A stretch of 64,000 nucleotides of DNA from Mytilus trossulus (GCF_036588685.1 NC_086383.1:62868001-62932000), one strand, 5' to 3'. Counted from the first letter of the stretch, positions 4,954 to 63,609 are shown. A program made the numbers and translations. Notes: generated from the letters alone by a model not told the origin.

Positions 4954-5292
4954 ATGTGCAATACACCAACATTTCAATATTATCTTGTTATATGTTGTTT
5001 AGGAGTTGGAATTCGATTATGCGATGCAGTCATTATAACCGGTGGCACTCTACATAAAAACAAAAGCATGGTTGCTGACACTATTTTTTCACTAGACAAT
5101 ATAGGTTTACAAATGTGTATAAGAGAAGCTATGCGATACAAATCATGTACTGGTTTAAACTATTGGCATGACAAGCTTCAATGTAAACTTTTGTCGTGGG
5201 ACCGAAACACATCTAACTTGCCTGTATCATTAGATGACCAGCTTATCGATAGCCCAGGACATATATATACAGATATCGATAGTTGGACAATG
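4954..5292 (+). CDS. Gene 1 exon 1: signal peptide + PAN/apple-like domain
   Basis: Hydrophobic N-terminus MCNTPTFQYYLVICCLGVGIRLCDA; PAN-like pattern MCIREAMRYKSCTGLNYWHDKLQCKL. Ends SWTM|GTAAGA at the same position as paralogous exon 1 copies (WKM|GTAAGG). Confidence 0.88.
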
Positions 5293-8200
5293 GTAAGATC
5301 AGGACATGTATTAACTGATAACGATAGTTAGACGATGGTAAGTCCAGAACATGTATTAACAGATTTCGATAGTTGGACGATGGTAAGTTCAGGACATGTA
5401 TTGACAGACATCGATAGTTTGACGGTGGTAGGTCAAGGACATGTATATAAAGATATCTATAGTTGGACGATGGTAAGTCCAGGACATGGATATACAGATA
5501 TCGATAGTTGGACGGTGGTAAGTCTAGGACATGTTTTAACAGATATCTATAGTTGGACGATGGTAAGTCCAGGACATATATGTTTATATATATATATCTC
5601 TAAATCTCGTCTAAACATCAACCCAACAATGTTAGATCTGTAAATTTGCTTTCGCAAATTTTTGGTTCTTCCCTCGCCGGGATTCGAACCCATGCTACTG
5701 TGATATCGTGCCACAAAATCGCCTGCACTGCAGCCGTCCCGTTAGACCACACGACCACTTTGGCTTCACAAAAGTAAAGCCATCGGTGGGCATGTGTTAC
5801 CTTTCCTCGTCAGTTTTAATCTAGCGGCGCACTACAGTACATGATATATTAGGCATGGATATGTTATTGTTACAGATCAGCTAAATTATCTATAGTAAAG
5901 GATCCTAAAACTTAATGTAAGATACAGTCACAGAAAATTATTATATTTATAAGTACGTCTGAGTCAGTGACAACTCTACAACAGATTTATCCATCGGATC
6001 ACCATCAATGATGGTGATACATGGCTGTGTACAATGTCACAGAAAATAATTGTATTCATATAGATATCGATAGTTAGACGATGGTAAGTCCAGGACATAT
6101 ATATACAGATATCTATAGTTTGACGATGGTAAGTCCAGGACATGTATTAACATATATCGATAGTTGGACGATTGTAAGTCAAGGAAATGTATTAACTTGT
6201 ATCGATAGTTGGACGATGGTAAGTCCAGGACATGTAAATACAGATATCGATAGTAAGACGATGGTAAGTCCAGGACATGTATTAACAGATTTCGATAGTT
6301 GGACGATGGTAAGTCCAGGACATGTATTGAGAGTCATCGACAGTTTGAGGATGGTAAGTTCAGGACATGTATATACATATATCGATAGTTGGACGGTGGT
6401 TAGTCCAGGACATGTACTAACACATATAGATATTTGGACGATTGTAGGTCCAGGACATGTATTAACATATATTGATAGTTGGACGATGGTAAGTTCAGGA
6501 CATATATATTTAGATATCGATAGTTGGACGATGGTAAGTCCAAGACATGAATATACAGATAAGTATCGATAGTTTTATGATTTTTTTATCCAATGCTTTT
6601 CGTAAAAGAATATCTGATATTCCGTATATCGAACGTAAAAGATGCTACATATATTGACCATGATTTGTGTGCTCCAAGGACTGAGCAAAGGTTTATGCCT
6701 TCAAGGCCAGGAGTTAAATCATAAAACATGTGATTAATGAGATAAAGACAACAACAGTCTAAAAACAATCTACACAGGGACTTAGGAATCAGTCGTAATG
6801 TCGCTCCAAGCCAGGGGAATGACAAAGGAGGGGATTATGATATCAGATAGACATTCCAACTCATCAGTCGAAAATAAACATATGAATAAAAAGGAACAAG
6901 ACAGACACTTAAACTATAGTACACAAAACAAAACAAACACACTTAAGATTAAACAAAACGAACCCAACAAAAACATCTGAATGATCTCCGGTGCTCCAGA
7001 AGTATAAGCATAATATGTTCTACATGTGGCACATATAGTGTTGCTGATATTAATATAAACCCAGTAGGTTTCATTCGTGAAAAGGGATGGTATTGTAGTT
7101 ACGACAGAAGGAACATATCCGCTATCATCTGTTCAACGGATTGTTTATATTAGTCAACACACTTATGGTGGCGAATGCCAGATTACATTTCTCGTTTATC
7201 CTAAATATTTCAATATATTTCAAGTCGGATATATGTAGTTAAAAAAAAATAAAAATAAAAAGCTTTGTTGCACTATTTAGCAGTACACAAAACAGACATA
7301 CAATTTTGGTCTTTTTGTTTGTTAGTCATAGCCATAGAGATTCAAAATTTGATCATTCTAGTGACTATTGTGTCGTGTTAATAACTGCTTGTACGAAGGC
7401 AATGTAATGAGTCATCTTCTCCCTTTGATATTTTTTTAATGGGTCTTTTGTGAACTCTACGAATTGAGTAGGGGTATATATTCCAAAGGCATTTAATCAG
7501 TTATCTCAATGTTTTCTCGGGTATATCAAATAAACGATACTTTTTTTCATTTCTTCCATTTTTAAATTTTTATTTTTCATTGTTTTGGAAATAATTAATA
7601 ACACATTACACCAGTATCAATATCAGAAGGTTACCGACATGAGTAGCAATGCGTTCATCATGTACATGATGTATATGCCATAAAGTGTCCTTGCGTCCTG
7701 AAAACATTTGAATCTAGCAACATTAAATACTAAAAACTATTTAATTGAAATTATTCACATTATGTATAGAACCAATCAGAACGAGTTGGATGTAGCATGT
7801 ATGCATCAGATCATTGTTCAAAACTGCAAGTTGCCTTATTGAATTGTTGTTGTCGTTCGGTGGCTGCTTTATTGCTTTATACCCAACACCTGAATGACTT
7901 AAGATTCATATCAATTTTTTTTTTAGAATTAGTTCCTGTTAATTAAGATATTATTGCTATGCTTTTATTACTGCAAAAAGGAGGACAGGGGTTATCATTT
8001 CAACAATTTAAACTTGCATTTTTATTTATTTTATTTTGAGTAAAACAAGTTTTTTATCAATATCGCAAAAAATAAAATCGTATTTTAGTCTGAAATGACA
8101 AGTTCGCATAAATTGATGCACGCAATAACTTCATAAGTCACAGCAATCTCCGTACAGCGCTCGTTTCCTTTCCGTATACCTAGTACACTACAATACAATG

Positions 8201-11200
8201 ACATGTTTAGTGTAGTGATACGAAATAAGTACGGAACGGATGTGAGCTCTGCGCCGGAGATTGAAGTCACAGTCTCATTTAATTTCATTAACAGGATTCC
8301 GATAGCTGTTGGCCCAATCCCTGTCCTGATGGTACAAAGTGTGCTCTGTCCAAAAGTAACGGTGATTTCTGCTTATCATATGGTGAGTTTATCTGACTTT
8401 TTATTTTAATTATGAACATGATAAAAGAGAGAATATATAGTTTTAAGGCATACATCATCAATAAAGTCGGGAAAATTGTAGAAGAATTTATCTTATCAAA
8501 TCAATAACTCATTTTCCGTAAAGATAATCATAAATTAGATATTGCGTATATGGGTTTGTCAATGCTAGAGTTATATCATTCAATAATAGGTCAAGCATAA
8601 TTTCAATTAAGTTTGAATGGAAAACGTCACATGCTATGAATGCATCACCCAACATGCGAATCTTGATAATGTCGAATTTTTACAATCATAAAATAGTCAA
8701 AATTGGCAGAATGAAAGATCACATGACTATACAGCTGGTGTTAAACTTCTCGGACTGCAAGCACATGTCGCTATTTAGTTACGTCACCGACACATCTTTC
8801 AATTAACCGTTTGTTAACATTTAGGTTCATGTTTCAAAGGTTTTGGTTTTGCCATTTGCTTTGGGATTTTCCTTTTAGAATTTGTGACAAAGTTCGGTGA
8901 TTTTCTGCAGAAACAAACAACCAGCGTTATCTGCCGCAAAATTTCCCAATTGTACATGATCACACTTAAAGGGATTTTAGCAACATTAATCTGTTTTTTA
9001 CCTAAAATCATCCGAGTTCCTGTTAATAAATGCAGACGCTTCTTTAGTATCGAATCTCTCTTATTTCACAGTTCATTGGATTACCTTAGACTTTGTTCCT
9101 TATCTTGATGTTCTGTATAATTGATTTACAAGATAATGATACGTTACACCACTGTCGCTAAATAGATACACCGATATACCACTGTCGCTGAATTGCAGCA
9201 TTGGTATACCACTGTCGCTGAACTGAATCATCGGTAGACCATTGTCGCTGATTTAAAATATCGGTAACCCGCTGTCGATGTATTGGATCATCGGTATACC
9301 ACTATCACTGAATAAGAACATCGGTATACCGCTGTCGCTGAATTAGGACATCGGTATACCGCTGTCGCTGAATTAGAACATCGGAATACCGCTGTCGCTG
9401 AATTAGAACAGCAGAATACCACTGTAACTGAAAAAGAACATCGGTATACCGCTGTTGCTGAATAAGAATATCGGTATACCAACGTCACTGAATGAGAACA
9501 TTGGTATACCGCTGTCGCTGAATTAGAACATCGGAATACCGCTGTCGCTGAATTAGAACATCGGAATACAGCTGTCGCTGAATAAGAATATCGGTATACC
9601 AACGTCACTGAATGAGAACATTGGTATACCGTTGTCGCTGAATTATGACGTCGGTATACCGCTGTCGCTGAATTAGAACATCGGTATACCGCTGTTGTTG
9701 AATTGAGTCATCGGTATACCACTGTCGCTGAATTGAATCATCGGTATACCACTGTCGCTGAATTGGATTATCGGTATACCGCTATCGCTGAATTAGAACA
9801 TCGATATACCGCTGTCGTTAAATTGAATCATCGGTATACCACTGTCGCTGAAATGGATCATCGGTATACCGCTGTCACTGAAAAAACCGGTATACCACTG
9901 TCGCTGAATTAGAACATCGGCATACCGCTGTCATCATTGATATGTTAATGATATTAAACTAACTGTTTATAAAACTTCCAAAATTCTCAAATATTAAGGC
10001 TTTTCTACCTCATGAATACATCACTGTAATTGGCAAAACTTTTAGGAGTTTTGTTTATCCTCAATGATCTTTAACTTCGTACTTTATTTGGTCTTTTGAA
10101 AAAAATTTTGATTCGAGCGTCACTGATGAGTCGTATGTAGATGAAACATGCGTCTGTCGTATATATAAAATTTCAATATTGGTATATATGATGAATTTTT
10201 TCAGAACATCAATATACCATTTGCTTAATTTCAAACGTTAATGGTCCTTAAAACCTGATCTGTTTTCTTTTTATTTTGACAGACTGTCCAAGTGTTACGC
10301 TCCACAGTTGTGGATTTGAGAATGAGAATGATACATCATGTATTTTCAAGAATTCATTGCAGGATGATTTTGATTGGACACGTCATTTTGTAAGTTAAAA
10401 CACTTTGGTTTCATGGGAAAACGTTCAAACTCTATATATATGTATATAATTAAGACCCTTTCAAAAATGTAGAATTTATTATAAATTAAAAACGGATATT
10501 ATCATCATTATGTTGAATAGTTTTTTGGCAAAAGGATTTTATTCTGTATCTTGTGAAAAAATATCAGACATCTAAACGTTTAATAACAAATTTTAAACCT
10601 CATCGAAGTACAGCCTTATTACTTATTACTAATACTAGTAACTAATGCGACAAGTGTTTGATATTGAAATGCTATGATTTTATTTATTTGACATATTGCC
10701 ATGCGTTGTAATCCAATGGAGTTATTCGTTAAAAATATATGTCAATTAAATAATTATGTAGATAAAGAAAACAATATATGGCAATGTAACACTCATGAAT
10801 GATGTTCGTTTTGAAATATAAGAGATATATAAAACATATTGACCCAATATGGCCGACTTTGATGAAAATAAAACACGGAGAGCAAAATGCAGATCTGGAC
10901 TTAAAGCGCTGAACCTAAGGCCTTAAGAGCAAATCCGACAAGAGATAAAAATGTCCATCAAGTCTAGTAATTTGTATTGAAGTTGTTTTGTTGCTGCCCT
11001 TAAATTATTAATTAAGTTTTGCAGTTAGTTACTATTATCTTGAATATTATAATAGATGAAAATAAACTGTAAACAGCAAAATTGTTAAGCAAAGTAAGAT
11101 CTAAAAATACCTTTGAGAAGTAATTGCCCTCGTTGTAAAGTTTTAACATTTTTTTTTGTAACTCTTTTTAATTTTTACTTACATCTTCTCCTCTGAAACT

Positions 11201-14200
11201 ACTCAGGCAAATTTACCCAAATTTGGCCGCAATCATCGTGTAAGTCTTTATATAAAAATGTTTCAGATGACCCCGCCTATCAATCATTATTGCTGATATA
11301 TCTATTTATAGAACATAGGGGTAAAATGCAAGTTTTGTCTTCTATTGTTTTAAGCTTCATAGATAGAGAAAATCGGAAAGGTACAGATATGTTCAGAATA
11401 ATGCACTCTACCAACGATCCAATCGATCAACGTCAAAGTGAAATTTTTACTGTTGATGTCAACTACAATTTCGAGTCAACAAAGAGTTAACGCAATGTGT
11501 TCATGAAGAGTACGAATTGAATTTTCACGCATATCTTCATGCTTGATCTTCTCTAGGCTGAAGTTCTTATCAAACTTGGTCCATCCAACATTATAAAAAG
11601 TAATAAAAAGAAAGTCACTTTAACATTTTGATAAACGGAGGCTTTTGATATAAATAAGTAGGAACAATTGTATATTATAATCGAATGTGTTTCTTATTCC
11701 TGCGTGTTTTAAAATATTGAACTGTCACTTAACGTTGTCTTTTCTTTTTGCGTTAATCTCGATATTGTCATACTCGCGCGAGGTTTGGCTAGCTATACTA
11801 ATGTTTATTCATGCATTCTTTAAATTTTAAAATGTCCTGTACCAAGTTAAGAATTCTTTTTTTTTTGTATTTGATTCGTACATCTGAATAGAATAACTAA
11901 TCAGAAAAGCATTTAAACTGATGAATTTTGAACAGCGGTATACTACTGTTGCCTTTATTATTCATAAAAATAAATGAAGGTTATTTTCTATTCTATTTTA
12001 GTTTTTTTTGTTTCATCGTCAAACTTTCAAATATCATGGCATACATCTTTGTGAGTTGATTAACCCCAATTTTAAATAAGGAATGATCCTTAAAACGTTT
12101 TCTGTCAATGATGTTCAAATCTTAATATTACCAAACTTTCCGTTAACTAGATGACACTATTGATATTTTAGGGTGGTACCCCTTCATCAAATACTGGACC
12201 AACAAAGGCAGCTTCCGGAAGTTACTACATGTACACAGAGGTGTCAAACGTACAGAATGGGGATAGAGCTGTACTTACAACACAAACAGCTAGCTTAACG
12301 GGTATGTTCAACCCACCATTGTTTCCTTAGAAAGTCCTGTGCCAAGTCAGGAAAATGGCCATTGTTATATTATAGTTCGTATCTGTGTGTTACATTTTAA
12401 TGTTGTGTTTCTGTTGGGTCGTTGTTCTCCTCTTATATTTGATGGGCTTCCCTCAGTTTTAGCATGTAACCCGGATTTGTGTTTTTTTCATCAATTTATG
12501 AGTTTCGAACAGCGGTATACTATTGTTACCTTGTTGAATAATAAAGAAACAACACTTTATACAGATTATTTGTCCGTAGAAGTTTTTCAAATTTGTCAAT
12601 TTCGAACATCTGAAACCAAATTACTAAATGTAACAAATATCAATTAAAATGAACCAACACACGTAATGAGATATATAAAACAGTAACGTACTATTTTGAC
12701 ATTATTAAAATATATCTATTTTTCAGCAAGTAGTTTCTGTCTGTCATTCCAGTATCATATGAAGGGCGCGCCTGGAACATTAAAAGTATTTGCTGGAGAC
12801 AAAAATTCTTCTTTAACAAGTATCTGGGAGAAATCTGGAGTGCAACCATATCCTGAGCAATGGAAATATGTTAATATACAAATACCACAATTCAATAACC
12901 CAGTTGTAAGTATGTTGTTATTTTATTAGGATTTAGTGATCTTTAACTATATGTTGTATTTTTTTTAAAAAACAACAAAGACTCGGTATCCTCATTTGTA
13001 ATGAAGTCAAAGAAAATGTAATGGGATTGAATTTCGTAAAACTGCAGAGTTCTGTTTTAGTTTAAAATTCTGTCATTTGCTTAGGCACTTATCGTTGAGA
13101 CATCTCCTTGAAGGATCGTTTTTGTTGTTTTTGTTGTATTTTTCTTGTCACATGTATGTGTGTGACCAAACAATGAAATTGACGTAGATGCAAACTACAA
13201 TTCATGCAATAACTCAAATAGCACCAGATATTCTGAGGAAAAAAAGATGTAGAAAACTGGTTTAAAAAAGGACCCACTATTATAACCGATTAATTAAATA
13301 TCTATATAATAATTCGGTACTGACTTGATTTTATAGTTTACTATTTAAATGAACCATTTAGAAATTTTGTAATTAAACAGTAACTAAGTTTCCAACTGCC
13401 TCATGTAAAGTCAGCTTTAGATGAACTTTGCTAAAAATTTTGCCCTGTTTTGTTTACAGCTCTTCAACGTTTACGGTCCGGTCCGTAATTATCATTGGCT
13501 TTTAAAAAGTGTCTTTGAGCGTTCCAGATGAAAGTACATGTATATCCAGAAAATCGCTTCCAATGCATTGAATTCATTTAACGTGTTGTTTTTATATTTG
13601 TACATGTATATACATACTTACAATGTAGACATACCAGACTTTGCTGTTTCCTTCTGGTTATCCAGCAGTAAAAGAAATAGTCTAAATTTTTATTTACTTA
13701 CCCAACTTTAGGTAGCACAATACAAAGATTTTATAACTCCAACTCCAAAATTTTAAAATGCTGTTACTTTCTTAATAATGCTTGAACATTTATAAAAGTG
13801 GTAGTTTTGGATAAGTAACAGATTACACTTTCAAATTAATGCAATGTTAGTATTATGCAACAATTTTGTAACCAATTATAATGTTAGCTGTGTCTAAAAT
13901 ATTGTTCACAAAATTTCCACTTTCAAATGAATTTAGCTTCTGCATATGTATCCCTAGAGGGTTGATTTAAATATATGTTGTTCCTATGGCCATTATTTAC
14001 AAAAGAGTGTCTCAAATTTCAGATAGAATGTCTAGAACAAATTTGACACCTAATTAAACATTATTTTCTTTTATATGGTTAGGATCTTTACACTAATTAG
14101 AGATTTATGAGAGAATGGAATACCATAGAGACAATCTGAGACACACTTTTCAAGCCAATGATGTGTTGATTAAGATTTCGTTAAAATTTTCTGTTTAGTT

Positions 14201-26200: not shown

Positions 26201-27784
26201 TTGGCCCAAAAAAATAACAGTTTGACAATACTGTTAAAATGTAAAATGGTTGTTATTAATTGGAAAGAAGAATGCTTCTGCTACAAAAATATGGGCTGTT
26301 TTTGACAATATAATACACATATATCGGGTACTAACATCATTTAAACATGCAAAATTACTAAAATTTTCACAATTTTAGCATGTTAGTTAAATTTCAGACG
26401 GTTTACCTCTTAAATGAAAGTGGCCGAATGTGTATTCCTTCTTAATATTGAAATGTAAATTGTATGATAATACATAACATATATCATGTATATAAAGACT
26501 GAGGATGAACACAGATGCGGCCACTTTCATTTTTGACAAAACCAATCTGAAAAGTGACACTTTTGACATATTTGATAGATTTTTCAAATTTGAGCTTAGA
26601 TGGGATCGTTGTAAATGACTGAATCAGTTAAAATATTTCACATCAACTAGTTGAATCAACTGAAATAGACACTTTAGTGTTTAAAGGGGCACTAGCTGAC
26701 AAATTCATTGTAACCGATTTGACTCAAATTCTCATATTTGGTTTATAACAATGTAAAACATTTATCCAAACTATAAAAAGTCTAAAATAAACAGTTTACA
26801 GAGCATGGGGTAGATAATATATAGGTTCGTTTCGTGTGTATTTTAGTCCAGACGCCATCTAATTAACTATCGATTTGACCTCAGATGACCATATAAGCGA
26901 TGTAAACAAAAATAAAGATACGAATAGATTAAAACAACACGTGCAATTGCATTTTTATAGGTCTGTTTGATTTGATTTTATAGATTAAAAATAGATGTTT
27001 CTAATTGTTTTTAACCATATAAGAATGATTTTATGTGCATCCAATTAGTAATCAAATGATTTACCGTAGTTTCACTTTCATTGTTGACATTCTTTTTATT
27101 TAAATAACCAGTACACGTACAATGCATGCGTTGTCAATCTCTAGCTAGGGGTTAACTTGAAGTTCACATGAATACCGGTTAGAATGATGATGACGTTTTC
27201 ACTTGCAAGCGAATCAGTCAAAAATTATGTTTAATCGCTTATTTCAACAAAATTAAAGGAAATTGATTGCTAAAAGCAAATTATTATTTCATTATTCCAA
27301 TTTGATTAATGATTGATCTAAAAAAAATCATACTTTATTTTTTTATATATATCGTAGCTAGTGCCCCTTTAAAAAGTATACAAAATCTTTCGTCAGATGA
27401 ACCTGAAATGTGAAACCAAAACCGCTCCCTAACGGACCTACTCCTTTACAAACATTACCATATGATTGATATTTATGTCATTACCGAAGTGCTGACTACT
27501 GGTCAGGTGATATGTACCAAGATGACTTGTGTGTCGAATAAAACTAACCTAGAAGCGAAGCAAAAATTAAAAGATAGATTTAAAAAATACAGACATATGT
27601 TTGTCAAATTTGAAGAATAAGGTTGTTTCGTTGTATTGCAAGACTGTTTGATTTTTTTTTTCAGATCACGATAGAAGGAACCAGAGGTACTCACTTCACA
27701 GGTGACATTGCTATTGATGATTTGATTCTAAAAATATCGAGTCGTTGTTGTAGGAAATGGTACGTCATTATTTCAACATCATAA
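4954..27784 (+). CDS. Gene 1 (whole span): secreted signal peptide + PAN/apple + 4-Cys EGF-like + MAM domain protein, 312-320 aa; join(4954..5292,8295..8382,10283..10389,12172..12301,12727..12905,27665..27784)
   Basis: Six exons with GT-AG boundaries and compatible phases (0,1,0,1,0) give one open frame. MAM motifs CGFE..C, DDFDWTR, TPSSNTGP, GSYYMYTE, FCLSFQYHM and GDIAIDD appear in order. Confidence 0.88.
5251..6572 (+). repeat. 45-bp tandem array (about 18.5 units) derived from the exon 1 3' end plus splice donor, split by an insertion
   Basis: Unit AGTCCAGGACATGTATTAACAGATATCGATAGTTGGACGATGGTA. Seven full units at 5251-5565, one split unit, ten full units at 6087-6536. Explains ORFs 5335..5643 and 6081..6572. 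Confidence 0.97.
5584..6057 (-). mobile_element. SINE-like element with a tRNA-like segment, inserted in the 45-bp array
   Basis: Minus strand 5765-5671 has A-box-like TGGTCGTGTGG and B-box GGTTCGAATCC. The element ends in a (TA)n tract and interrupts one repeat unit at its TATA stretch. Confidence 0.7.
6830..7175 (-). mobile_element. Decayed 3' end of Penelope-like retroelement
   Basis: Colinear with 36160-36530 (GGTGCTCC.GAAG..TAAGCA, TTGTAGTTACGAC, GGAACATATCCG). Confidence 0.65.
8295..8382 (+). CDS. Gene 1 exon 2: 4-Cys EGF-like module
   Basis: AACAG|GAT...TAT G|GTGAGT encodes DSDSCWPNPCPDGTKCALSKSNGDFCLSY, homologous to exon 2 of copies A and B. Not in the ORF track frame. Confidence 0.9.
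9150..9935. repeat. 30-bp minisatellite, about 26 copies, in intron 2
   Basis: Unit CATCGGTATACCGCTGTCGCTGAATTAGAA. Explains ORFs 9288..9608 and 9703..9912. Confidence 0.97.
10117..10160 (+). ncRNA. Type I minimal hammerhead ribozyme motif within a dispersed repeat (about 9940-10200)
   Basis: GCGTCA-CTGATGA-stem II-GAAA-CATGCG-TC-TGTCGT. Catalytic boxes are intact; stems have mismatches. Confidence 0.7.
10283..10389 (+). CDS. Gene 1 exon 3: MAM domain N-terminus
   Basis: GACAG|AC...TTT|GTAAGT encodes (D)CPSVTLHSCGFENENDTSCIFKNSLQDDFDWTRHF. Confidence 0.92.
12172..12301 (+). CDS. Gene 1 exon 4: MAM domain
   Basis: TTTAG|GGT...ACG G|GTATGT encodes GGTPSSNTGPTKAASGSYYMYTEVSNVQNGDRAVLTTQTASLT. 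Confidence 0.92.
12305..12540 (+). repeat. Dispersed SINE-like repeat with core CCTGTACCAAGTCAGGAA and end GAACAGCGGTATACTACTGTTGCCTTTATT
   Basis: Related copies at about 11780-11960 (+), 15100-15200 (-), 38125-38220 (-) and 43710-43990 (-). Confidence 0.7.
12727..12905 (+). CDS. Gene 1 exon 5: MAM domain
   Basis: TTTCAG|CA...GTT|GTAAGT encodes (A)SSFCLSFQYHMKGAPGTLKVFAG...IWEKSG...QWKYVNIQIPQFNNPV. Confidence 0.92.
13711..14433. mobile_element. Non-autonomous TTAA-type (Kolobok-like) DNA transposon
   Basis: 22-bp TIR GGTAGCACAATACAAAGATTTT; flanks are TTTA and TTAA. Confidence 0.8.
17165..18388 (+). mobile_element. 5'-truncated, disabled non-LTR retrotransposon (CR1/L2-like RT C-terminal region)
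   Basis: TLFSIFINDL, LLYADD, KYL, PILDYSSGVWG and FRCGILPL...RLCIFC motifs; in-frame stops; AATAAA followed by a short TTAC-type repeat tail. Confidence 0.9.
20284..20428. mobile_element. Small GC-rich MITE
   Basis: CAGGGGCGGGTCTAG at the left end versus reverse complement of the right end CAGGCGCGGATCCAA. Confidence 0.55.
20649..21707. mobile_element. MITE with about 47-bp TIRs and subterminal palindromic repeats
   Basis: TIR ATGTTCCGGACCATATGAGTATTTGGACCAT.CGCGTATGGT.ATGA; repeated palindrome GACCATACGCGTATGGTC. Confidence 0.85.
24289..25573. mobile_element. Foldback-type element with about 490-bp modular inverted arms
   Basis: 24289-24775 aligns to the reverse complement of 25088-25573. 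The arms are built from degenerate 21-bp units (TGATGTGGTCTTGTCATTCTT). Confidence 0.85.
25980..26023 (-). ncRNA. Type I minimal hammerhead ribozyme motif (best-preserved copy), in repeat about 25940-26165
   Basis: Minus strand GCGTCA-CTGATGA-GTCTTATTTAGTC-GAAA-CGCGCG-TC-TGGCGT. Stem I pairs fully, the GUC cleavage triplet is present, and stem II has one mismatch. Confidence 0.82.
26179..27447. mobile_element. MITE with TAGGTCC-type ends, host of a nested element
   Basis: TAGGTCCAGTAA at the left versus reverse complement TAGGTCCGTTAG at the right; interrupted at a TTAA site. Confidence 0.6.
26685..27368. mobile_element. Nested Kolobok-like MITE
   Basis: TTAA-AGGGGCACTAGCT ... AGCTAGTGCCCCT-TTAA: perfect 13-bp TIR and TTAA TSD. 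Confidence 0.92.
27665..27784 (+). CDS. Gene 1 exon 6: MAM domain C-terminus
   Basis: T-rich TTCAG| acceptor; encodes ITIEGTRGTHFTGDIAIDDLILKISSRCCRK. Ends either by read-through to TAA at 27782-27784 or at donor TG|GTACGT (27759/27760). Confidence 0.88.
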   Translation: MTIEGTRGTHFTGDIAIDDLILKISSRCCRKWYVIISTS

Positions 27785-37863: not shown

Positions 37864-38025
37864 TTAGGATGTTATCTTGTAAACATTAGCACTGAATCCA
37901 GCTTTGTAAACGGAACCGTCCGTTGTCATGATAATAGCTATACAATGTCTGATTGATCGAACTTCTGGTGGTAGTTCCTCACCAGTAAAGCTACCTAAAA
38001 GTCTGTTAACACCACATTCGTAGAC
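37864..38025 (-). pseudogene. Copy A exon 4: CUB C-terminal half
   Basis: TTGTAG| then VYECGVNRLLGSFTGEELPPEVRSIRHCIAIIMTTDGSVYKAGFSANVYKITS*; 162 nt, as in copy B. Confidence 0.88.
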
Positions 38026-41455: not shown

Positions 41456-41607
41456 CTTTACATAGTCACAGCAGGATTCTAAGTCGAAGTGTGTGAACCG
41501 TAAGGCGACTTTATTACCAATTCCAGCTTCAATCTTCCAAGTTTCGTTCATTTTGTGAACATACTTATTTGGGAAACCTGGTGAAGATATATTCTTCAGA
41601 AATGTTT
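41456..41607 (-). pseudogene. Copy A exon 3: CUB N-terminal half
   Basis: (E)TFLKNISSPGFPNKY...TWKIEAGIGNKVALRFTHFDLESCCDYVK|GTGATA; 152 nt. Confidence 0.88.
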
Positions 41608-43258: not shown

Positions 43259-43358
43259 CGTTCACAATGTACTTTAAGCAAACATGATCATTTGATGTTA
43301 ACGTTATACATCTTGTTTTTTCTGAGCAAGGATTGTTAGGCCAGCAACTATCTTTCTT
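43259..43358 (-). pseudogene. Copy A exon 2: 4-Cys EGF-like module
   Basis: TTTCAG| KKDSCWPNNPCSEKTRCITLTSNDHVCLKYIVN G|GTAAGT. Confidence 0.88.
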
Positions 43359-45880: not shown

Positions 45881-46202
45881 CATTTTCTGAAATGTCTGAA
45901 TAGCTATACCCTGGCGTACTAACCAACTGACTTTCTAAGTTCGAGTCTGACAATAGCTCGCAGCTAAGAAAATCCTTTTGAAAATTTATACTGTCGCAAT
46001 TCTTTATTCGTAAGCATCCCCGAATACACATTTTAGGACCAATATTATCGTGAGTTAATATTATGTGAGAGGTAATTTTCTTGTCATTTTGGAAACTTCC
46101 ACCATTTACAGTATCTTGGAACCAAATTCTAAGTTAAAGATACAAAATATAAATAAAAATGATTTTCATTTTAGATGAAACAGAAGCGCAGTTATGTTTC
46201 AT
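45881..46202 (-). pseudogene. Copy A exon 1: signal peptide + PAN, with a nonsense codon and a frameshift
   Basis: MKHNCASVSSKMKIIFIYILYL*LRIWFQDTVNGG...MCIRGCLRIKNC...; ends TCAGAAAATG|GTAAGG, lacking TGGAA. Confidence 0.9.
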
Positions 46203-46953: not shown

Positions 46954-47125
46954 TTTTATTACATTGTCAAATTGCTTTTTTTTTTATTAAACTAATGCAA
47001 AAAATGTAAGGAACTATATGGTTTTCCTACGCATGTTTTGTTTCGACGTTATCGACGTCTTGACAACGCCAAGTCAATCAATGTAATTCATTGCAACCGA
47101 TGTAATAATTTTATTTAATTAATTA

Positions 47126-49304: not shown

Positions 49305-49348
49305 GTGTCACTGATGAATCTTGTGTAGATGAAACGCGCGTCGGGGTT
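49305..49348 (+). ncRNA. Type I hammerhead motif in repeat about 49165-49380
   Basis: GTGTCA-CTGATGA-ATCTtgtgtAGAT-GAAA-CGCGCG-TC. Core and stem II are intact; stem I is damaged. Confidence 0.7.
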
Positions 49349-50365: not shown

Positions 50366-50692
50366 ATGAGACATAACTGTGATTCGTTTTCAGCTATAAT
50401 GAGAATCTTAATATTTTACATAATGTGTCTTAAAATTGGTATTTGCTTCCAAGATACTGTAAACGGTGGAAATTTCCAAAATAACAAGAAAATGAACTCT
50501 CGCATTATCTTAACTCGCGATAATATTGGTCCTAAAATGTGCATTCGAGAATGCTTACGAATAAAGAATTGCAACGGTATAAACTTTCAAAAGGATTTTC
50601 TTAAGTGCGAGCTATTATCAAATTCGAACTTAGAAAGTCAGTTGGTTAGTACACCAGGGTTTAGCTATTCAGACATTTCAAACTGGAAAATG
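50366..50692 (+). CDS. Copy B exon 1: signal peptide + PAN/apple-like domain
   Basis: Hydrophobic segment IMRILIFYIMCLKIGIC; MCIRECLRIKNCNGINFQKDFLKCELL; ends WKM|GCAAGT. Confidence 0.88.
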
Positions 50693-53600: not shown

Positions 53601-56600
53601 TTTTTTGAATTTTTTAGTTAGTATCTACATCTGATAAACCCCACCTCTAGAAAAGGCAGTTTCACAATAACTTAAAAGCCCAGCTTTGATTGCTTAAAAG
53701 ATAAATGTTACGAATTGGAAAGAGGTATTGTGGAGCACTTGGAAGACTTAGCATTATACCGTTGTTTATAAGGACACTTCTGTAGTTTAGGTATTCAATA
53801 CAGAGATGGAAGATCCAGGTCTTCATCTTAGGAACGTAGAACAGACATTTGAATATCCGGGATTTCCTCTTTGATAAGTGTCGTGAGGGTATAAGTTGAA
53901 TTTCCAAGTGAATTGTCAATACCTTATAATCGGATTTCAAATAGGTGTTGAGCCACAGGTACTGGGACTGGGTAATACACTTGTTGCTAATACTGTCATG
54001 CTGCTAACTGCAGTACAGGAACGGAACTTTTTAACTATAAACATTATGAGAAATTGGAAAAATCAACCAAAAAACCATATCCGTATTGCGTTTAATTTTA
54101 TAATAATATTATATCACAAGCTGACTTCCATAAATTATTTTTCGTCAAATGTGAATTTCAATGGTGTCAGTTCAACCAACTCGTGCAATCTCTTTCAGAA
54201 GGCAGAAAGTTGCTGGCCAAATCATCCCTGCTCAGAGAAAACAATATGTATCCCGTCAAAATCAAATGCTCATGTTTGCCTTAAGTACAAGTTATCCGGA
54301 GGTAAGTTGTTCTTATCCTTTTTAGTTTTTTACAATTATTCACGATTCGTTCATGAAGGATACAAAAACATAACTTAATTTTTTCTTACCAAATCTATTC
54401 ATATCTGCGTTGTTTTCAATATATAGGGAACATCTATTATGATCTTTGGACATGTAATTGTAAAATTAAACAGGAGATTTTACCTCAAGGAAAGAACTAT
54501 ATTACCATGTTCTACGTTATTTTCCAGATCTAACAAGCACATGTATGTTCATGTGCATTATGCTATTAATAACTATGTACCCGTCATATCAGTCACGTGT
54601 CTTTGAGTATTAAGCTTCACTTGCATCAGTTATCAGAGGAGCATCAATTCAGGAATATGACAGTCGTTTGCAAATTGTTTGATGTGTTTGAGCTTTTGAT
54701 TATGAATTTCTTTCCTATTATTTTTAGTTTTTAATTTTAATTCCTACCACTCGTTAGTTAAAGATTAACCGACTACGAAATTTTAAAAGGACCAACATTA
54801 ACACAAACATGACAAAACGACTAAAAACCCAACAAACACACAGCAAACACTACATGTAACAATTATACTTGATTAACACGATATAAATGGCCGAGGTAAA
54901 CCCAAGTGTTCTTGTTGGGTTAACAGTTTCTACATCCCATGCTAAAAATGTTTTTTTTATAATGTAAAGAAACAAACTTAACATATCATAAAATTAATCA
55001 CAAAACAATTTAGTTTTTCTTACTGTATATGACTTTTCAAATATTTATTTTTCCTTCTTCGTGCAAACTTATTTATTTTGAAACCTTTTTACTTGAACCA
55101 CAAGTATGAAAAGACAAATGAAGACGAGTGGTATTTCTTTTATTTCTATAGTCTTATTTTTTGTTATTTTTGAAATCAGAGTTTCACATTATAACATGAA
55201 GCAACTTAATATAAAAACAACGATAACATCAGGAGAGTCATAATGATCTCATATCAATTTGAAAACTTTCAAAAATAATTTCCCTTATTGCACTTATGCT
55301 CATATGTCATACATCATGGATGAAGATCAATGCAACTTTCAAACCAAAAATTAAATAATCTCACAACTTGCAAAATCTATAACTATATTGTTACGATAAT
55401 CCAATAATAACTTCATCATTAGTTCAAAACTTGTTTATAAGACTGTTTTTAGGATGAACAGAAAGTTTTAAAAATTCATTTTATAAACTTTTAGAAACAT
55501 TTCTGGAGAATATATCTTCACCAGGTTTCCCAGATAAGTATGAATACAATCTCAACGTGACTTGGACGATTAAAGCTGGAATTGGTAATAAAGTCATCTT
55601 ACGGTTCACACACTTCGAATTAGAATCCTGCTGTGATTATGTAAAGGTGATATTGAATTTATTTTATTTGATAATAATTTGATTTTGAATGTATCACATT
55701 TTCTTATTGACTAACCACATGTTGTTTATCAGCTCATAGACATCATTTTGTCACGTGGCTCAGACTTAATCAATGTTTTATCCTGACTTATTCCGGCTTA
55801 AAATTGAATGTAGAATTAAATTATAAGGAATGACTGTTATATATATTTGTTTTATATTCTGTCTATTTGAAATAACATTCTTAAAAATCTGGTGCACACA
55901 CAACGCAGATTATTAAATGTGTATTATTTTTTTTACTGTTATTTCGAATAGACAGAAAGTTTAAAATCATTTCCAGACATCATTGATAAAGTAGTTGTTT
56001 ATAAATCATATGCAAATAGATGTAAAATACCTTTAAAGGACATCAAATTATAAACTTGACTCTCTATTTTCCATTATTCCTACTTGTATCGAATTGTTTC
56101 AATAACGATGATATAAAGCGTAGAAAACGATGTGTTATTCAAGATGGAAAGCAAATAAATTTGAGCCGTATAATTTACAGAAACTCGAGCGCTTTATTAA
56201 TTTTGATGATTTCTTGATATAAGAGATTGTTGGTAATTTGAGAGATAAATAAGTTAACGTAATAAAGAACAGGTTATATTAGAAATATTGATCAATCAAA
56301 TATTATAAACTTTAATTTTGAAACATTAACGGTGCCTGAATGTATAATTGTTATTATGTGAAAGCTGTTATAAATAAGTCATATATGTAAACTCAATATA
56401 GCTACATTTTGTACCTGCCTACGCACGTTTTGTCTACATAAGAATTCCCTGGAGAATCGAATATTTTAAGGCTTCATATTACCATTTTTAAAGCAACTTT
56501 CATTAAGATCGTATCTTTTACAGTTGTCAACCATATCATAACAATAGACACGTCAGCATATGTTGTATGATTGCCAATATACTATTTAACTACATAAAAG

Positions 56601-58355
56601 AGGGACGAAAGATACCAAAGGGATAGTCAAACTCATAACTCTAAAACAAACTGACAACGCCATGGCTAAAAATGAAAAAGACAAACAGAAAAACAATAGA
56701 ACACATGACACAACATAGAAAACTAAAGAATAAACAACACGAACCCCTCCAAAAACTAGCGGTGATCTCAGGTGCTCCGGAAGGGTACATCAACATGCAT
56801 GTTATGTATCCTAAGGTAATGTTGTACGACAACTCGAAAAAAAAACGTATCTGAAGCTTTAATAACATTGTTAACATCCCCCGCCCCGGTTTCTGGTGTG
56901 GTTTGTGTTGCTTAGTCTTTAGTTTTCTATGTTGTGTTTTGTGTACTATCATTTGTTTTGTTCTTTTATCCATGGCGTTGTCAGTTTATTTAAAATCTAT
57001 GATCTTGAATGTATTGTGCGTATTTGGGGTGGTTTTTTTTTATTCTACATAGGCTAGATGTATAAGGGGAGGGTTGAGATCTCACCAAACATGTTTAACA
57101 CCTTTCAATGTTTGGGGTCTCCGCCATTTTTCAATCTAGTATGCTATTTATTTTCATTTTAGTTCATTTATATACATATTTTGGAGTTAAGGGTGTCGTC
57201 CATTATACTGAACTAGTATACAATTTATTAAGGGGCCAGGTAATGCCCACCTCTGGGTACGGGGTTTTCTTGCTACCTTGAAAACTCATTGGTGGCGTTC
57301 GGCTGTCATCTTCTCTTTGTTCTGTGACATATTCCCCATTTCCAATATGAATTCTAACTTTTTATGACACAATATGAAAAAAAGAAACTTCCATGACACT
57401 TTTGTTGTAGTCTTATAATAAAATTGGTACAACTCAGGAATTCGTCCTTAACTAAAACCAAATACATCTCGATGATAATTCATTTGCTGATAATTATCAT
57501 GTTCAAATTGTACTTTACGTTCATACTTTTGTTGCCTATAATCTCAGCCTCAACCATGAATATCAAACTGAACATTTTGCAAGAGCTTATCACCCCAGCC
57601 TAGAGCTTCTTAAATTATGTTTTCAACGGAGTAGACATTTTTTGTTTAAGGGAAGCACTTAGAGTTACTTGTGTTTAAAACTTGTGAAAATTACAAGATT
57701 AAACAGAAAACCAGCCGGAAAAGAAAAAACATTATCATCCAAACATAAGCTAACACACATATCCAAACATAAGCTGAGACTATCATCCAAAAAATAAATT
57801 CGATTCTCGCCCAAACATAATCTAAGACTTTCATCAAAACATAGGCTAAGACGTTAATTCACACATAAGCAAAAACTTGCAACAAGGCATAAACAAGGCA
57901 TAAGCCAAGACTTTCGATCAATCATAAGCTAAGTCTTTCAAAGCAAAGAGTTGAAACCAAACATAAACTAGGACTTACTGTACCAAGTCAGGAAAATGGC
58001 AAGTGTTATATAATGGTCAATATATGTATGTACGTTTGTTTTTGAAGTAGTTTAGTGTATATACTACTAGTGGCTTTATTTTCCAAAACCCACTCAAAAA
58101 TTTTATAAGACAGAAAGCGGTGTGTTTTCTTACACAGATTCAAATATATCCAGTATTATTGCATTAAGGTTATCCTTATTTTATTTGTTGTAGGTCTATG
58201 AATGTGGTGTTTACAGACTTTTATTTAGCTTTAATGGTGAGGAACTACCACCAGAGGTTCGATCGATCGAAAATTGTATAGCTATTATCATGACAACTGA
58301 CGGTTCCGTCAACAAAGGTGGATTCAGTGCTAATTTTTACAAGATAACATCCTAA
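50366..58355 (+). CDS. Copy B (whole span): secreted PAN + EGF-like + CUB protein, 247 aa; join(50366..50692,54199..54301,55495..55646,58194..58355)
   Basis: All four exons are open and phase-compatible (0,1,0), 744 nt in total. The first intron starts GC instead of GT. Confidence 0.8.
50805..52990 (-). mobile_element. Decayed Penelope-like retroelement in copy B intron 1 containing a 70-bp array
   Basis: Colinear with 36160-37056 on both sides of the array (GTHCAP, LRYKDDVL motifs on the minus strand). Confidence 0.85.
51321..52650. repeat. 19 x 70-bp tandem array derived from RT coding sequence
   Basis: Unit TTAGTCAAGATATGAGGCAGACTTAACTGTTTATATTGTATCCTTTATCTCTAGTTGGATAGGATAGATG; single-copy equivalent at 36804-36873. 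Confidence 0.97.
54199..54301 (+). CDS. Copy B exon 2: 4-Cys EGF-like module
   Basis: TTTCAG| KAESCWPNHPCSEKTICIPSKSNAHVCLKYKLSG G|GTAAGT. Confidence 0.9.
55495..55646 (+). CDS. Copy B exon 3: CUB N-terminal half
   Basis: TTTTAG| (E)TFLENISSPGFPDKYEYNLNVTWTIKAGIGNKVILRFTHFELESCCDYVK |GTGATA. Confidence 0.9.
56597..56786 (-). mobile_element. Short Penelope-like 3'-end insertion specific to copy B intron 3
   Basis: AAAGAGGGACGAAAGATACCAAAGGG...GGTGCTCCGGAAGGGTA; absent from the homologous copy A intron near 40490-40500. Confidence 0.8.
58194..58355 (+). CDS. Copy B exon 4: CUB C-terminal half and stop
   Basis: TTGTAG| VYECGVYRLLFSFNGEELPPEVRSIENCIAIIMTTDGSVNKGGFSANFYKITS*. Confidence 0.9.
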   Translation, partial: VYECGVYRLLFSFNGEELPPEVRSIENCIAIIMTTDGSVNKGGFSANFYKITS

Positions 58356-63235: not shown

Positions 63236-63301
63236 AAATTACTTTAAAAATTCGAAATATAAAAGACAACATAATTAAAAGAAAACATGAACGATCCTTA
63301 C

Positions 63302-63609
63302 CATTTTCCATTCTGAAATGTCTGAATAGCTATACCCTGGCGTACTAACCAACTGACTTTCTATGTTCGAATCAGACAAGAGCTCGCACTTAAGAAAATC
63401 CTTTTGAAAGTTCATACCGTTGCAATTCTTCATTCGTAAGCATTCTCGAATGCACATTTTAGGACCAATATTCTCAAGAAATAATATAATTCAAGAGTTC
63501 CTTTTCTTGTTTTTTGAAAATTTCCACCGTTTACAGTATCTTGGAGGCAAATTTTAATTTCAAGACACATATTAATATAAATAAAAATATGAATAAAAAC
63601 GGTTTCCAT
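63302..63609 (-). pseudogene. Copy C: orphan exon 1 (signal peptide + PAN), disabled
   Basis: METVFIHIFIYINMCLEIKICLQDTVNGGNFQ, then a 1-nt deletion and an in-frame TGA (63493-63491). Donor WKM|GTAAGG is intact. No exons 2-4 recognised downstream. Confidence 0.85.

What the first reader, a model, noticed from the sequence alone, without database searches (positions are those of the whole stretch)
4954..63609. Modular secreted-protein family: one PAN + EGF-like front cassette, swappable MAM or CUB back end
Seen: four neighbouring loci share a homologous exon 1 (signal peptide, NIG..MCIRE...C.G.N...D.L.C.LLS...QL...PG..Y.DI..W.M, phase 0 donor). Three share exon 2 (SCWPN.PC...T.C.....N...CL.Y, phase 1 donor). 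After that phase 1 intron, gene 1 continues into MAM and copies A/B into CUB. Established: PAN, EGF, MAM and CUB are extracellular binding modules, and phase 1 introns are the usual joints for shuffling them. Inference: a locally evolving constant-cassette/variable-module family of small secreted recognition or adhesion proteins, caught in birth-and-death turnover. None of this architecture is visible in the ORF track, and I do not recognise it as a named family.
Basis: partly seen in the sequence, partly recalled or inferred. Interest (0 to 1): 0.8.

Follow-up and report, generated by a model that had tools for sequence, protein, structure and literature searches.

The report
Mussel PAN-leader family with swappable back ends
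This mussel genome window holds four neighbouring copies (two apparently intact, two broken) of a large, so far unnamed family of small secreted proteins that keep one PAN/apple + mini-EGF front end and carry different binding modules (here MAM or CUB) behind it.

Summary
The window is most likely Mytilus trossulus chromosome-scale contig C11.

**Loci in the window**
- Gene 1 has six exons: signal peptide + PAN, a 4-Cys EGF-like hairpin, then a complete MAM domain.
- Copy A is PAN + hairpin + CUB. It looks intact but uses a GC donor for intron 1.
- Copy B has a stop codon in the signal peptide and a 5-bp deletion, so it is a pseudogene.
- Copy 4 is a lone, frameshifted exon 1.

**Family**
- Exon 1 has at least 132 matches in this genome and 453 database relatives, mostly Mytilus and more distantly oysters.
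- Behind the same cassette, paralogs carry EGF repeats, CUB, MAM, fibrinogen-related, C-type lectin, SRCR, WSC, TSP1 or unnamed domains.
- The junctions read in the window and in four of the paralog loci are phase 1.
- The cassette tree disagrees with back-end type (at least 16 changes; AU tests reject single origins). Gene 1 is a mosaic of two lineages.
- This fits exon shuffling plus tandem birth-and-death.

**Limits**
- Function (soluble recognition or bridging proteins) is inferred only.
- No RNA run was listed, so splicing rests on homologous annotated proteins.
- No paper describing the family was found; only PAN + fibrinogen combinations had been noted before.

The parts
4954..5292 (+). 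Gene 1 exon 1: hydrophobic leader plus PAN/apple-like domain (113 aa), GT donor, phase 0
   Evidence: Pfam PAN_1 19.0 bits, E 1.3e-3. 99.7% identical to the C21 counterpart.
8295..8382 (+). Gene 1 exon 2: 4-Cys EGF-like hairpin (DSDSCWPNPCPDGTKCALSKSNGDFCLSY), phase-1 donor
   Evidence: 86% identical to the exon-2 region of P0028. No Pfam hit on its own.
10283..10389 (+). Gene 1 exon 3: start of MAM (profile positions 1-24), phase-1 acceptor
   Evidence: 63% identical to the P0172 MAM.
12172..12301 (+). Gene 1 exon 4: MAM profile positions 29-66
   Evidence: 79% identical to P0027.
12727..12905 (+). Gene 1 exon 5: MAM profile positions 73-128
   Evidence: Pfam MAM E 3.2e-7, 30.7 bits, above the cut-off.
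27665..27784 (+). Gene 1 exon 6: end of MAM (…GDIAIDDLIL…) and stop codon. It lies 14.8 kb after exon 5, across an intron that holds at least one reverse-transcriptase fragment
   Evidence: tblastn with the P0027 C-terminus: 82% identity, E 4e-5. Acceptor TTTTTTTTTTCAG| and reading frame. RT fragment in the intron.
50399..50692 (+). Copy A exon 1: leader plus PAN/apple (98 aa; alternative upstream ATG at 50366). GC donor ATG|GCAAGT, phase 0
   Evidence: PAN_1 20.9 bits. AlphaFold2 pLDDT 85.7, and all top PDB fold matches are PAN/apple domains. The GC donor is also present in the C21 counterpart.
54199..54301 (+). Copy A exon 2: 4-Cys hairpin, phase-1 donor
   Evidence: 30 matches in the genome, many next to exon-1 matches.
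55495..55646 (+). Copy A exon 3: CUB profile positions 11-59
   Evidence: Pfam CUB E 1.6e-8, 35.2 bits.
58194..58355 (+). Copy A exon 4: CUB profile positions 71-110 and stop codon
   Evidence: Pfam CUB E 1.5e-4, 22.4 bits.
45881..46169 (-). Copy B exon 1, disabled: TAA at codon 11 (KIIFIYILYL*) and a 5-bp deletion before the donor (frameshift relative to exon 2)
   Evidence: One search reports '1 TAA'.
43259..43358 (-). Copy B exon 2 (open)
41456..41607 (-). Copy B exon 3: first half of CUB (open)
37864..38025 (-). Copy B exon 4: second half of CUB and stop codon (open)
63302..63609 (-). Copy 4: lone exon 1 with a 1-bp deletion and an in-frame TGA. No exon 2 or CUB exon follows it in the window
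   Evidence: Its C21 counterpart (96% identical) does have exon 2 and CUB exons.

Best explanation
The window lies inside a tandem cluster of a large mussel gene family. The genome is most likely Mytilus trossulus, contig C11, 62.84-62.96 Mb.

Shared design of the family:
- Exon 1 encodes a hydrophobic leader and a PAN/apple-fold domain and ends in phase 0.
- Exon 2 encodes a small 4-cysteine beta-hairpin (the first two-thirds of an EGF-like module, motif CWPNPC) and ends in phase 1.
- After that come zero to several phase 1-1 EGF exons.
- Last comes a terminal binding module that differs from gene to gene: CUB, MAM, fibrinogen-related, C-type lectin, SRCR, WSC, TSP1, a Ser/Thr-rich tail, or a domain with no Pfam family.

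How new combinations arise (inferred): the junctions read share phase 1 and the genes sit in tandem and inverted arrays, so unequal or illegitimate recombination within introns (exon shuffling) can put a new back end behind an existing cassette. Tandem duplication then spreads the new form and mutation kills copies.

In the window, gene 1 (PAN-hairpin-MAM, about 320 aa) and copy A (PAN-hairpin-CUB, 236 or 247 aa) look functional. Copy B and copy 4 are dead.

Shown: the architecture, the family size, the phases, the discordance between front-end and back-end histories, and the pseudogenes.

Inferred: the products are secreted two-headed binding proteins. The constant PAN head would bind a common partner (a glycan or a host surface or matrix component), and the variable tail would give ligand specificity. 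They would then act as soluble recognition, opsonin-like or bridging molecules. I give that functional reading roughly 40-50%.
For: Window anatomy:
- Exon anatomy, phases and lesions were read directly from the sequence.
- Pfam on single exons gives PAN_1, MAM and CUB.
- Exon 1 of A folds with pLDDT 85.7, and every top PDB match is a PAN/apple domain: SML-2 lectin, HGF N domain, TgMIC4, plasminogen, factor XI. TM is about 0.6.
- In the model of homologue P0172 the cassette (residues 22-132) has block-mean pLDDT of 73-90 per ten residues. It shows a sheet plus a helix, then a hairpin.

Family size:
- At least 132 exon-1 matches in the genome, clustered on C11, C21, C1, C5, C13, C14 and C2.
- 30 exon-2 matches, many adjacent to exon-1 matches.
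- 453 database relatives at E<=1e-3. They come from five Mytilus species and, more distantly, from oysters.

Variable back ends on the same cassette in database proteins:
- EGF repeats; EGF + Lectin_C; EGF + Fibrinogen_C.
- CUB; EGF + CUB; MAM.
- EGF + SRCR; SRCR; WSC; Sushi + TSP1.

Own-genome table of 24 loci:
- The cassette is complete in 21.
- The back ends are CUB (6), MAM (2), EGF only within 10 kb (7), EGF + an unnamed domain (2), EGF + FReD (1), EGF + C-type lectin (1) and EGF + CUB (1).

Phase 1 was read by eye in four paralog loci (L035, L037, L045, L049): at the exon-2 donor, at both ends of EGF exons, and at the first CUB, C-type lectin and unnamed-domain exons.

Swapping:
- The gene 1 MAM clade is sister (99/97) to an EGF + unnamed-domain clade.
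- A CUB protein is sister to a MAM protein (100/93).
- An SRCR protein is sister to a CUB protein (100/99).
- There are at least 16 back-end changes on the 46-row tree.
- AU tests reject one clade for the MAM bearers (p 0.013) and for the direct-CUB bearers (p 0.0012).
- Gene 1 is a mosaic. Its front end is 64% (exon 1) and 86% (exon 2) identical to P0028, which has no MAM. It is only 30% and 52% identical to P0172, yet P0172's MAM exons are 56-64% identical to gene 1's.

Selection and turnover:
- Exons are more conserved than introns between the C11 and C21 copies (96% against 88%).
- dN/dS is 0.31 for A against its C21 copy and 0.46-0.61 between paralogs.
- B is broken in both blocks by different lesions.
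- Copy 4 has lost its 3' exons in C11 but not in C21.
Against: - There is no transcript evidence for the window genes. No RNA run was listed, so read laying could not be used.
- The exon joins rest on annotated or predicted homologues from other Mytilus assemblies (P0018, P0021, P0027, P0172, P0061).
- Copy A depends on a GC donor. Gene 1 depends on a 14.8-kb intron that carries at least one reverse-transcriptase fragment. Either gene could be impaired.
- The window exon 1s score just below Pfam's PAN_1 cut-off. Gene 1's clade lacks one of the four core PAN cysteines.
- 'EGF only' loci may have further modules beyond the 10 kb sampled.
- The tree rests on only 90 columns. P0172 has a long branch, and the AU groups were named after the tree was seen.
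- Nothing here tests binding, secretion or any immune role.
Confidence: 0.8

Rival explanations
1. Same family and architecture, but the proteins are structural extracellular matrix components (byssus, shell matrix or mucus), not recognition molecules. The PAN and EGF parts would serve as cross-linking or scaffold modules.
For: - Several members are auto-named 'adhesive plaque matrix protein 2-like' or 'fibropellin-like' because of Tyr/Gly-rich EGF repeats.
- One member on this same contig has a Ser/Thr-rich mucin-like tail (P0131).
- CUB, MAM and EGF are common in matrix proteins (general knowledge).
Against: - Those names are automatic similarity labels, not tests.
- Many back ends are classical invertebrate pattern-recognition modules: fibrinogen-related, C-type lectin, SRCR.
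- The products are small and carry a single terminal module, unlike long repetitive matrix proteins.
Confidence: 0.3
2. All four window loci are decaying remnants. Gene 1 and copy A only look intact but are not productively spliced, because of the 14.8-kb intron interrupted by retroelement sequence, the array of about 18 extra donors in intron 1, and the GC donor in A.
For: - Two of the four copies are certainly dead.
- The B counterpart on C21 is also dead.
- The 45-bp array copies the exon-1/intron-1 junction.
- A's donor is GC.
- dN/dS of 0.3-0.6 is only moderate constraint.
Against: - All ten exons of gene 1 and A are open, with proper acceptors and donors.
- Exons are clearly more conserved than introns between C11 and C21.
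- dN/dS is below 1.
- The GC donor has the perfect GCAAGT context and is shared with the C21 copy.
- Gene 1's exon 1 is 99.7% identical to its C21 counterpart.
Confidence: 0.12
3. The cassette and the back-end exons belong to different genes, and their adjacency is a gene-model artefact.
For: - There is no cDNA for the window genes.
- Some public models are clearly chimeric or truncated. P0026 includes a BEN domain, P0054 a DUF7869, P0187 a reverse transcriptase, and P0027 skips exons 2-3.
Against: - The cassette is followed by a compatible phase-1 module on the same strand in 21 of 24 loci examined.
- Independent annotations in five species join them.
- Continuous ORFs span cassette + EGF + CUB, or cassette + SRCR, on 1-2 kb assembled contigs.
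- Exon 2 ends in a split codon, so it needs a phase-1 partner.
- The MAM and CUB exons have no start codon or leader of their own.
Confidence: 0.03

Closest known systems
VIgL proteins of the snail Biomphalaria (FREPs, CREPs, GREPs): IgSF front end with a fibrinogen, C-type lectin or galectin back end
   Same: A lineage-expanded, tandemly clustered family of secreted mollusc proteins. A constant N-terminal module is combined with alternative C-terminal lectin-type modules. FREP architecture is described in PMC7588048; CREPs and GREPs are from my own knowledge.
   Different: The front end here is PAN/apple plus a 4-Cys hairpin, not IgSF. The back ends are more varied (CUB, MAM, SRCR, WSC, TSP1, EGF arrays). 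No somatic diversification or immune function has been shown here.
PAN/apple + fibrinogen-related proteins noted in Crassostrea gigas (4 genes) and Lottia gigantea, and the EGF + FBG 'FReM' of Biomphalaria
   Same: PAN/apple, or EGF, placed upstream of a fibrinogen domain in molluscs (stated in PMC7588048). The L041, P0025 and P0161 type found here (PAN-hairpin-EGF-FReD) is probably the mussel counterpart.
   Different: Those reports treat the combination as an oddity within fibrinogen-related proteins. Here the fibrinogen back end is only one of about ten alternatives on a shared cassette, and the window's own genes carry MAM and CUB.
PAN/apple domains of known structure: Sarcocystis SML-2 galactose lectin, Toxoplasma MIC4, HGF/plasminogen N domains, factor XI apple domains
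   Same: The fold. These are the top Foldseek matches of exon 1, and they give the only, weak, PDB sequence hit (2yil, E 0.08). The known members bind carbohydrate, heparin or protein.
   Different: Sequence identity is only 8-17%. There is a single PAN per protein. The cysteine set is reduced (four core Cys in A, three in gene 1), and a 4-Cys hairpin exon always follows.
EGF-repeat proteins used as automatic names (mussel foot protein 2 / 'adhesive plaque matrix protein 2-like', fibropellin, Notch/Delta-like)
   Same: Tandem EGF modules encoded by phase 1-1 exons in many paralogs.
   Different: Those proteins have no PAN leader. The window genes have no canonical EGF repeat at all. The names come from partial similarity only.

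Membership tests
PAN/apple domain (Pfam PF00024 PAN_1) | Sequence score at or above Pfam's gathering cut-off (21.4 bits) | tested here: not met
   Gene 1 exon 1 scores 19.0 bits and copy A exon 1 scores 20.9 bits. Family relatives pass: P0008 22.5, P0056 23.6, P0087 24.0, P0125 32.2, P0128 37.4.
PAN/apple domain (Pfam PF00024 PAN_1) | PAN fold: a helix packed on an antiparallel sheet, pinned by core disulfides | tested here: met
   AlphaFold2 model of A exon 1 has pLDDT 85.7, with helix 45-54 flanked by strands. All top PDB matches are PAN/apple domains, probability 1.00, TM about 0.6, E 1.4e-3 and weaker. The four core Cys are present in A; one is replaced (REAM) in gene 1's clade.
EGF-like domain (PF00008) | Six cysteines in the C1-C6 pattern and a Pfam match | tested here: not met
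   Exon 2 has four Cys (C-x4/5-C-x6-C-x10-C) and no EGF hit in the window copies. A paralog's exon-2 region aligns weakly to EGF profile positions 1-21 of 32 (E 0.021). The homologue model shows a beta-hairpin there. It is therefore EGF-like only in part.
MAM domain (PF00629) | Match over the full profile of about 158 positions, above the cut-off of 26.4 bits | tested here: met
   Exons 3, 4 and 5 cover profile positions 1-24, 29-66 and 73-128, and exon 5 alone scores 30.7 bits. Exon 6 supplies the GDIAIDD end by 82% identity to P0027, whose MAM match reaches position 154. Homologue P0172 matches positions 1-158 at E 3.7e-23, and its model matches solved MAM domains.
CUB domain (PF00431) | Pfam match above the cut-off of 21.4 bits covering the domain | tested here: met
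   A exon 3 scores 35.2 bits (positions 11-59) and exon 4 scores 22.4 bits (positions 71-110). The orthologue-like P0018 matches positions 9-109 at E 1.5e-23.
Exon-shuffled modular extracellular proteins (phase 1-1 module rule) | Modules bounded by introns of the same phase (phase 1) | tested here: met
   The exon-2 donor is phase 1 in gene 1, A, B and paralogs. EGF exons are phase 1-1. The first exons of the CUB, MAM, C-type lectin and unnamed domains start in phase 1. One locus (the exon-2 donor of L041) could not be resolved by eye.
VIgL / FREP family of gastropods | IgSF domain(s) at the N-terminus | tested here: not met
   No Ig-family Pfam hit in any window exon or in the relatives scanned. 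This is an analogy of design only, not membership.

The most novel reading that the evidence does not exclude
The PAN-leader family (over 100 loci in one mussel genome) may be a combinatorial innate recognition repertoire that has not been described as such. A constant PAN + hairpin head would dock to a common host partner. Phase-1 exon shuffling among tandem paralogs would keep creating new ligand-binding tails. Haplotypes would differ in which copies are present or alive. That would make it a bivalve counterpart of snail VIgLs, built on a different scaffold.
Probability: 0.35. Interest if true: 0.75.

Novelty: new variant of a known kind. Interest (0 to 1): 0.6.

Why it matters
Bivalves lack adaptive immunity and are known for huge, variable families of secreted binding proteins (C1q, C-type lectins, fibrinogen-related proteins) and for gene presence/absence variation (PMC7653742).

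A family that ties many of these modules (FReD, C-type lectin, SRCR, CUB, MAM) to one shared PAN-type leader would cut across the current domain-by-domain catalogues. It would explain some 'odd' PAN-FReD proteins noted earlier.

It would also give a clean natural example of phase-1 exon shuffling caught in action: a mosaic gene 1, young pseudogenes, and gene-content differences between the C11 and C21 blocks.

In practice it gives annotators a diagnostic cassette, in place of misleading names such as 'notch-like' or 'adhesive plaque matrix protein 2-like'.

Tried and rejected
I rejected it in favour of 27665-27784.
- **RNA evidence.** The look-up of sequencing runs on copy A (50300-58400) listed no RNA run, so none was listed and read laying was never used.
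- I could not inspect the 1-2 kb Logan contigs that carry continuous multi-domain ORFs.
- **Genome letters.** The own-genome table is therefore limited to 24 loci.
- **Joined models.** All searches, folds and trees used single exons or database proteins. This is why search for homologous proteins, with its length window, was not useful and was not run.
- **PDB sequence search.** The exon-1 profile gave only one weak apple-domain hit (E 0.08). The fold search was needed.
- **Whole-protein fold search.** The Foldseek search of the whole P0172 model was dominated by the MAM part and said nothing about the cassette.
- **Papers.** Paper searches on PAN/apple with Mytilus, mussel, bivalve or mollusc terms (one search was a syntax error) found no description of this family. 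The only related statement is about PAN + FReD proteins, in PMC7588048. The bivalve C-type lectin survey (PMC10140915) and the mussel pan-genome paper (PMC7653742) do not mention PAN.
- **Module census.** I asked whether relatives of gene 1's MAM exon or A's CUB exon always sit behind a cassette. They do not: 4 of 36 MAM exons and 8 of 19 CUB exons do (hand comparison of the coordinates). This fits capture of modules from wider pools, but the lists are lower bounds.
Full report
**1. What is in the window**

The window is AT-rich (GC about 0.31) and has no N runs. It maps to G000:C11:62868001-62932000 of a 1.30-Gb assembly. C11 is 71,253,669 bases long. That is exactly the contig length recorded for two RefSeq proteins of Mytilus trossulus. 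I therefore take the genome to be M. trossulus. This is an inference from that match.

Motif scans and ORF listings confirm four homologous copies of an exon that encodes a hydrophobic leader followed by NIG..MCIRE..C.G.N...L.C.LLS. They also confirm three copies of a second small exon with SCWPN.PC.

**2. Gene models, read from the sequence**

Gene 1 (+ strand):

| Exon | Coordinates | Content |
|---|---|---|
| 1 | 4954-5292 | 113 aa; donor GTAAGA, phase 0 |
| 2 | 8295-8382 | donor phase 1 |
| 3 | 10283-10389 | MAM |
| 4 | 12172-12301 | MAM |
| 5 | 12727-12905 | MAM |
| 6 | 27665-27784 | end of MAM, stop codon |

- A tblastn with a Mytilus edulis MAM homologue (P0027) found the missing end of the domain (ITIEGTRGTHFTGDIAIDDLILK) 14.8 kb further on, behind a clean polypyrimidine acceptor.
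- That intron holds at least one reverse-transcriptase fragment.
- The product is about 320 aa.

Copy A (+ strand):
- Exons are at 50399-50692, 54199-54301, 55495-55646 and 58194-58355.
- The product is 236 aa, or 247 aa from an upstream in-frame ATG at 50366.
- Its first intron starts with GC (ATG|GCAAGT). The counterpart on contig C21 has the same reading (…KMASIIHVFF).

Copy B (- strand):
- Exons are at 46169-45881, 43358-43259, 41607-41456 and 38025-37864.
- Exons 2-4 are open.
- Exon 1 carries a TAA at codon 11 and a 5-bp deletion just before the donor, which puts it out of phase with exon 2. It is a pseudogene.

Copy 4 (- strand, 63609-63302):
- It has a 1-bp deletion and a TGA.
- No exon 2 or CUB exon follows it.

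A and B lie head to head, and about 700 bp around each exon 1 are 79% identical in inverted orientation.

**3. Domain identity**

- On single exons, Pfam gives MAM and CUB above threshold and PAN_1 just below it.
- An AlphaFold2 model of A's exon 1, built with 27 paralogous exon-1 translations, has pLDDT 85.7.
- All its top PDB matches are PAN/apple domains: the Sarcocystis SML-2 lectin, the HGF N domain, TgMIC4, plasminogen and factor XI.
- Exon 2 has four cysteines, not six, and gets no EGF hit.
- In a model of homologue P0172 the exon-2 region forms a beta-hairpin packed after the PAN domain.
- A paralog's copy aligns weakly to the first 21 of 32 EGF profile positions.
- I call it an EGF-like 4-Cys hairpin.
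I neither built nor searched the joined proteins.

**4. The family**

- Exon 1 of A has at least 132 six-frame matches in this genome, in clusters on several chromosomes.
- Exon 2 has 30 matches, many adjacent to exon-1 matches.
- A profile of 27 exon-1 translations finds 453 proteins at E<=1e-3 among 1.84 billion representatives.
- The named hits are from M. coruscus, M. edulis, M. galloprovincialis, M. californianus and M. trossulus. More distant ones are from Crassostrea and Saccostrea.
- Their names are automatic: 'uncharacterized', 'ficolin-1-like', 'adhesive plaque matrix protein 2-like', 'neurogenic locus notch homolog', 'CUB/MAM/EGF-like domain-containing'.

**5. Variable back ends**

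Pfam scans of the longer hits show the same leader + PAN + hairpin followed by:
- EGF repeats.
- EGF + C-type lectin.
- EGF + fibrinogen C.
- CUB, and EGF + CUB.
- MAM.
- EGF + SRCR, and SRCR alone.
- WSC.
- C-type lectin.
- Sushi + TSP1.
- A Ser/Thr-rich tail.
- A C-terminal domain with no Pfam family (P0028, P0037).

I also fetched 10 kb downstream of 20 paralogous exon 1s in the window's own genome and classified them by tblastn with domain pieces. Of 24 loci, counting the window's four, 21 have the full cassette.

| Back end | Loci |
|---|---|
| CUB | 6 |
| MAM | 2 |
| EGF only within 10 kb | 7 |
| EGF + unnamed domain | 2 |
| EGF + fibrinogen | 1 |
| EGF + C-type lectin | 1 |
| EGF + CUB | 1 |

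Two of the remaining loci (paralogs) show exon 1 only, and copy 4 shows nothing after exon 1. A fourth locus has the full cassette but no detectable module within 10 kb.

**6. Mechanism**

- The exon-2 donor, both ends of the EGF exons, and the first exons of the CUB, MAM, C-type lectin and unnamed modules are phase 1 where I read them (the window genes and four paralog loci). This is the classical condition for exon shuffling.
- A maximum-likelihood tree of the cassette (46 rows, 90 columns) puts different back ends on sister branches with strong support. It needs at least 16 changes of back end.
- AU tests reject a single clade for MAM-bearing cassettes (p 0.013) and for direct-CUB cassettes (p 0.0012). 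Two caveats apply: the groups were named after the tree was seen, and P0172 has a long branch.
- Gene 1 is visibly mosaic. Its exons 1 and 2 are 64% and 86% identical to P0028, an EGF + unnamed-domain protein. They are only 30% and 52% identical to P0172, whose MAM exons are 56-64% identical to gene 1's.
- Relatives of gene 1's MAM exon 5 (36 in the genome) and of A's CUB exon 3 (19) are mostly not behind a detected cassette. By my hand comparison of the coordinates, 4 and 8 are. This fits capture from wider module pools, but these are lower-bound lists.

**7. Turnover**

A 3.6-Mb contig, C21, is collinear with C11 62.84-62.96 Mb. Identities to the window copies are as follows:

| Copy | Identity to C21 counterpart |
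|---|---|
| Gene 1 exon 1 | 99.7% |
| A exons | 94-96% |
| A introns | 81-89% |
| B exons | 91-97% |
| Copy 4 exon 1 | 96% |

- The C21 counterpart of copy 4 still has exon 2 and both CUB exons. The window copy does not.
- The C21 counterpart of B has an intact exon 1 but a TAA in exon 2.
- dN/dS is 0.31 for A against its C21 copy and 0.46-0.61 among paralogs. That is purifying but relaxed selection.
- I could not decide whether C21 is the second haplotype or a segmental duplicate. Widespread hemizygosity and presence/absence variation are documented for Mytilus (PMC7653742).

**8. Function**

Nothing here tests function. The products are small. They have a hydrophobic leader (no signal-peptide predictor was run) and two potential binding ends. 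Many paralogs carry classical invertebrate recognition modules. My preferred reading, at about 40-50%, is soluble recognition or bridging proteins. A structural matrix or mucus role is the main rival, at about 30%.

**9. What is known**

- The paper searches I ran found no description of this family.
- PMC7588048 notes that PAN/apple domains occur with fibrinogen domains in four C. gigas genes and some Lottia FReDs. It also describes an EGF + FBG 'FReM' in Biomphalaria.
- The closest design analogue is the snail VIgL group (IgSF + alternative lectin domains). Membership fails because no IgSF domain is present.
- I rate this a new variant of a known kind: a lineage-expanded, exon-shuffled family of secreted binding proteins.

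**10. Limits**

- No RNA run was listed, so read laying was unusable.
Tandem Repeats Finder confirms 45-bp arrays at 5255-5581 and 6058-6561.

Noticed in passing
window 5255-6561: There are 45-bp tandem arrays (7.3 + 11.2 copies, 81-82% matches). Each unit repeats the last codons of gene 1 exon 1 plus the GTAAG donor (…DIDSWTM|GTAAGT…). Intron 1 therefore begins with about 18 decoy donors. The C21 counterpart (L019) has similar copies.
   Followed up: partly
window 9148-9932: A 30/60-bp tandem array (26 or 13 copies, 79% matches) lies in intron 2 of gene 1. It translates as HRYTAVAELE repeats in one frame. It shows no relation to the gene.
   Followed up: no
window 50692-50698 and L002/L031: Copy A's intron 1 uses a GC donor in a perfect GCAAGT context. 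The 96%-identical copy on C21 has the same donor, which suggests a maintained GC-AG intron and not a fresh lesion.
   Followed up: partly
window 17244-17969 (+); also 36615-37079 (-): A reverse-transcriptase fragment (Pfam RVT_1, E 3e-8) sits inside the 14.8-kb intron 5 of gene 1. A second ORF that looks like a retroelement by eye, downstream of copy B, has no Pfam hit.
   Followed up: partly
window 53403-53927: An interspersed repeat of about 525 bp in intron 1 of copy A is 79-81% identical to dozens of loci on many contigs. It is probably a SINE or MITE-like element.
   Followed up: no
L036:7209-9545 and L037:6865-9200 (C21:879237.., C11:62959025..): Two paralogs next to the window end in a domain of about 135 aa (…GRDGVWPGYYVY…GTFTINGSWNPLSKDINFVKAY…) that has no Pfam family, even at E<=1. 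It is conserved in M. edulis, M. galloprovincialis and M. coruscus proteins (P0028, P0037).
   Followed up: partly
C21:668851-889236 versus C11:62844655-62969024: The two blocks have the same gene order. The spacing between the A counterpart and the copy-4 counterpart is 101 kb on C21 and 12.9 kb on C11. Divergence ranges from 0.3% to 12% along the block. This is either a very divergent second haplotype or a recent segmental duplication.
   Followed up: partly
L044 (C1:3157795-3167794): Two exon-1 copies lie 1.4 kb apart on the same strand, with no exon 2 or back end within 10 kb. This may be a local exon-1 duplication or a decayed array.
   Followed up: no
database proteins P0026, P0054, P0187: Some public gene models fuse the PAN cassette to BEN, DUF7869 or reverse-transcriptase domains. 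These are probably annotation chimeras with neighbouring transposon ORFs and not real architectures.
   Followed up: no
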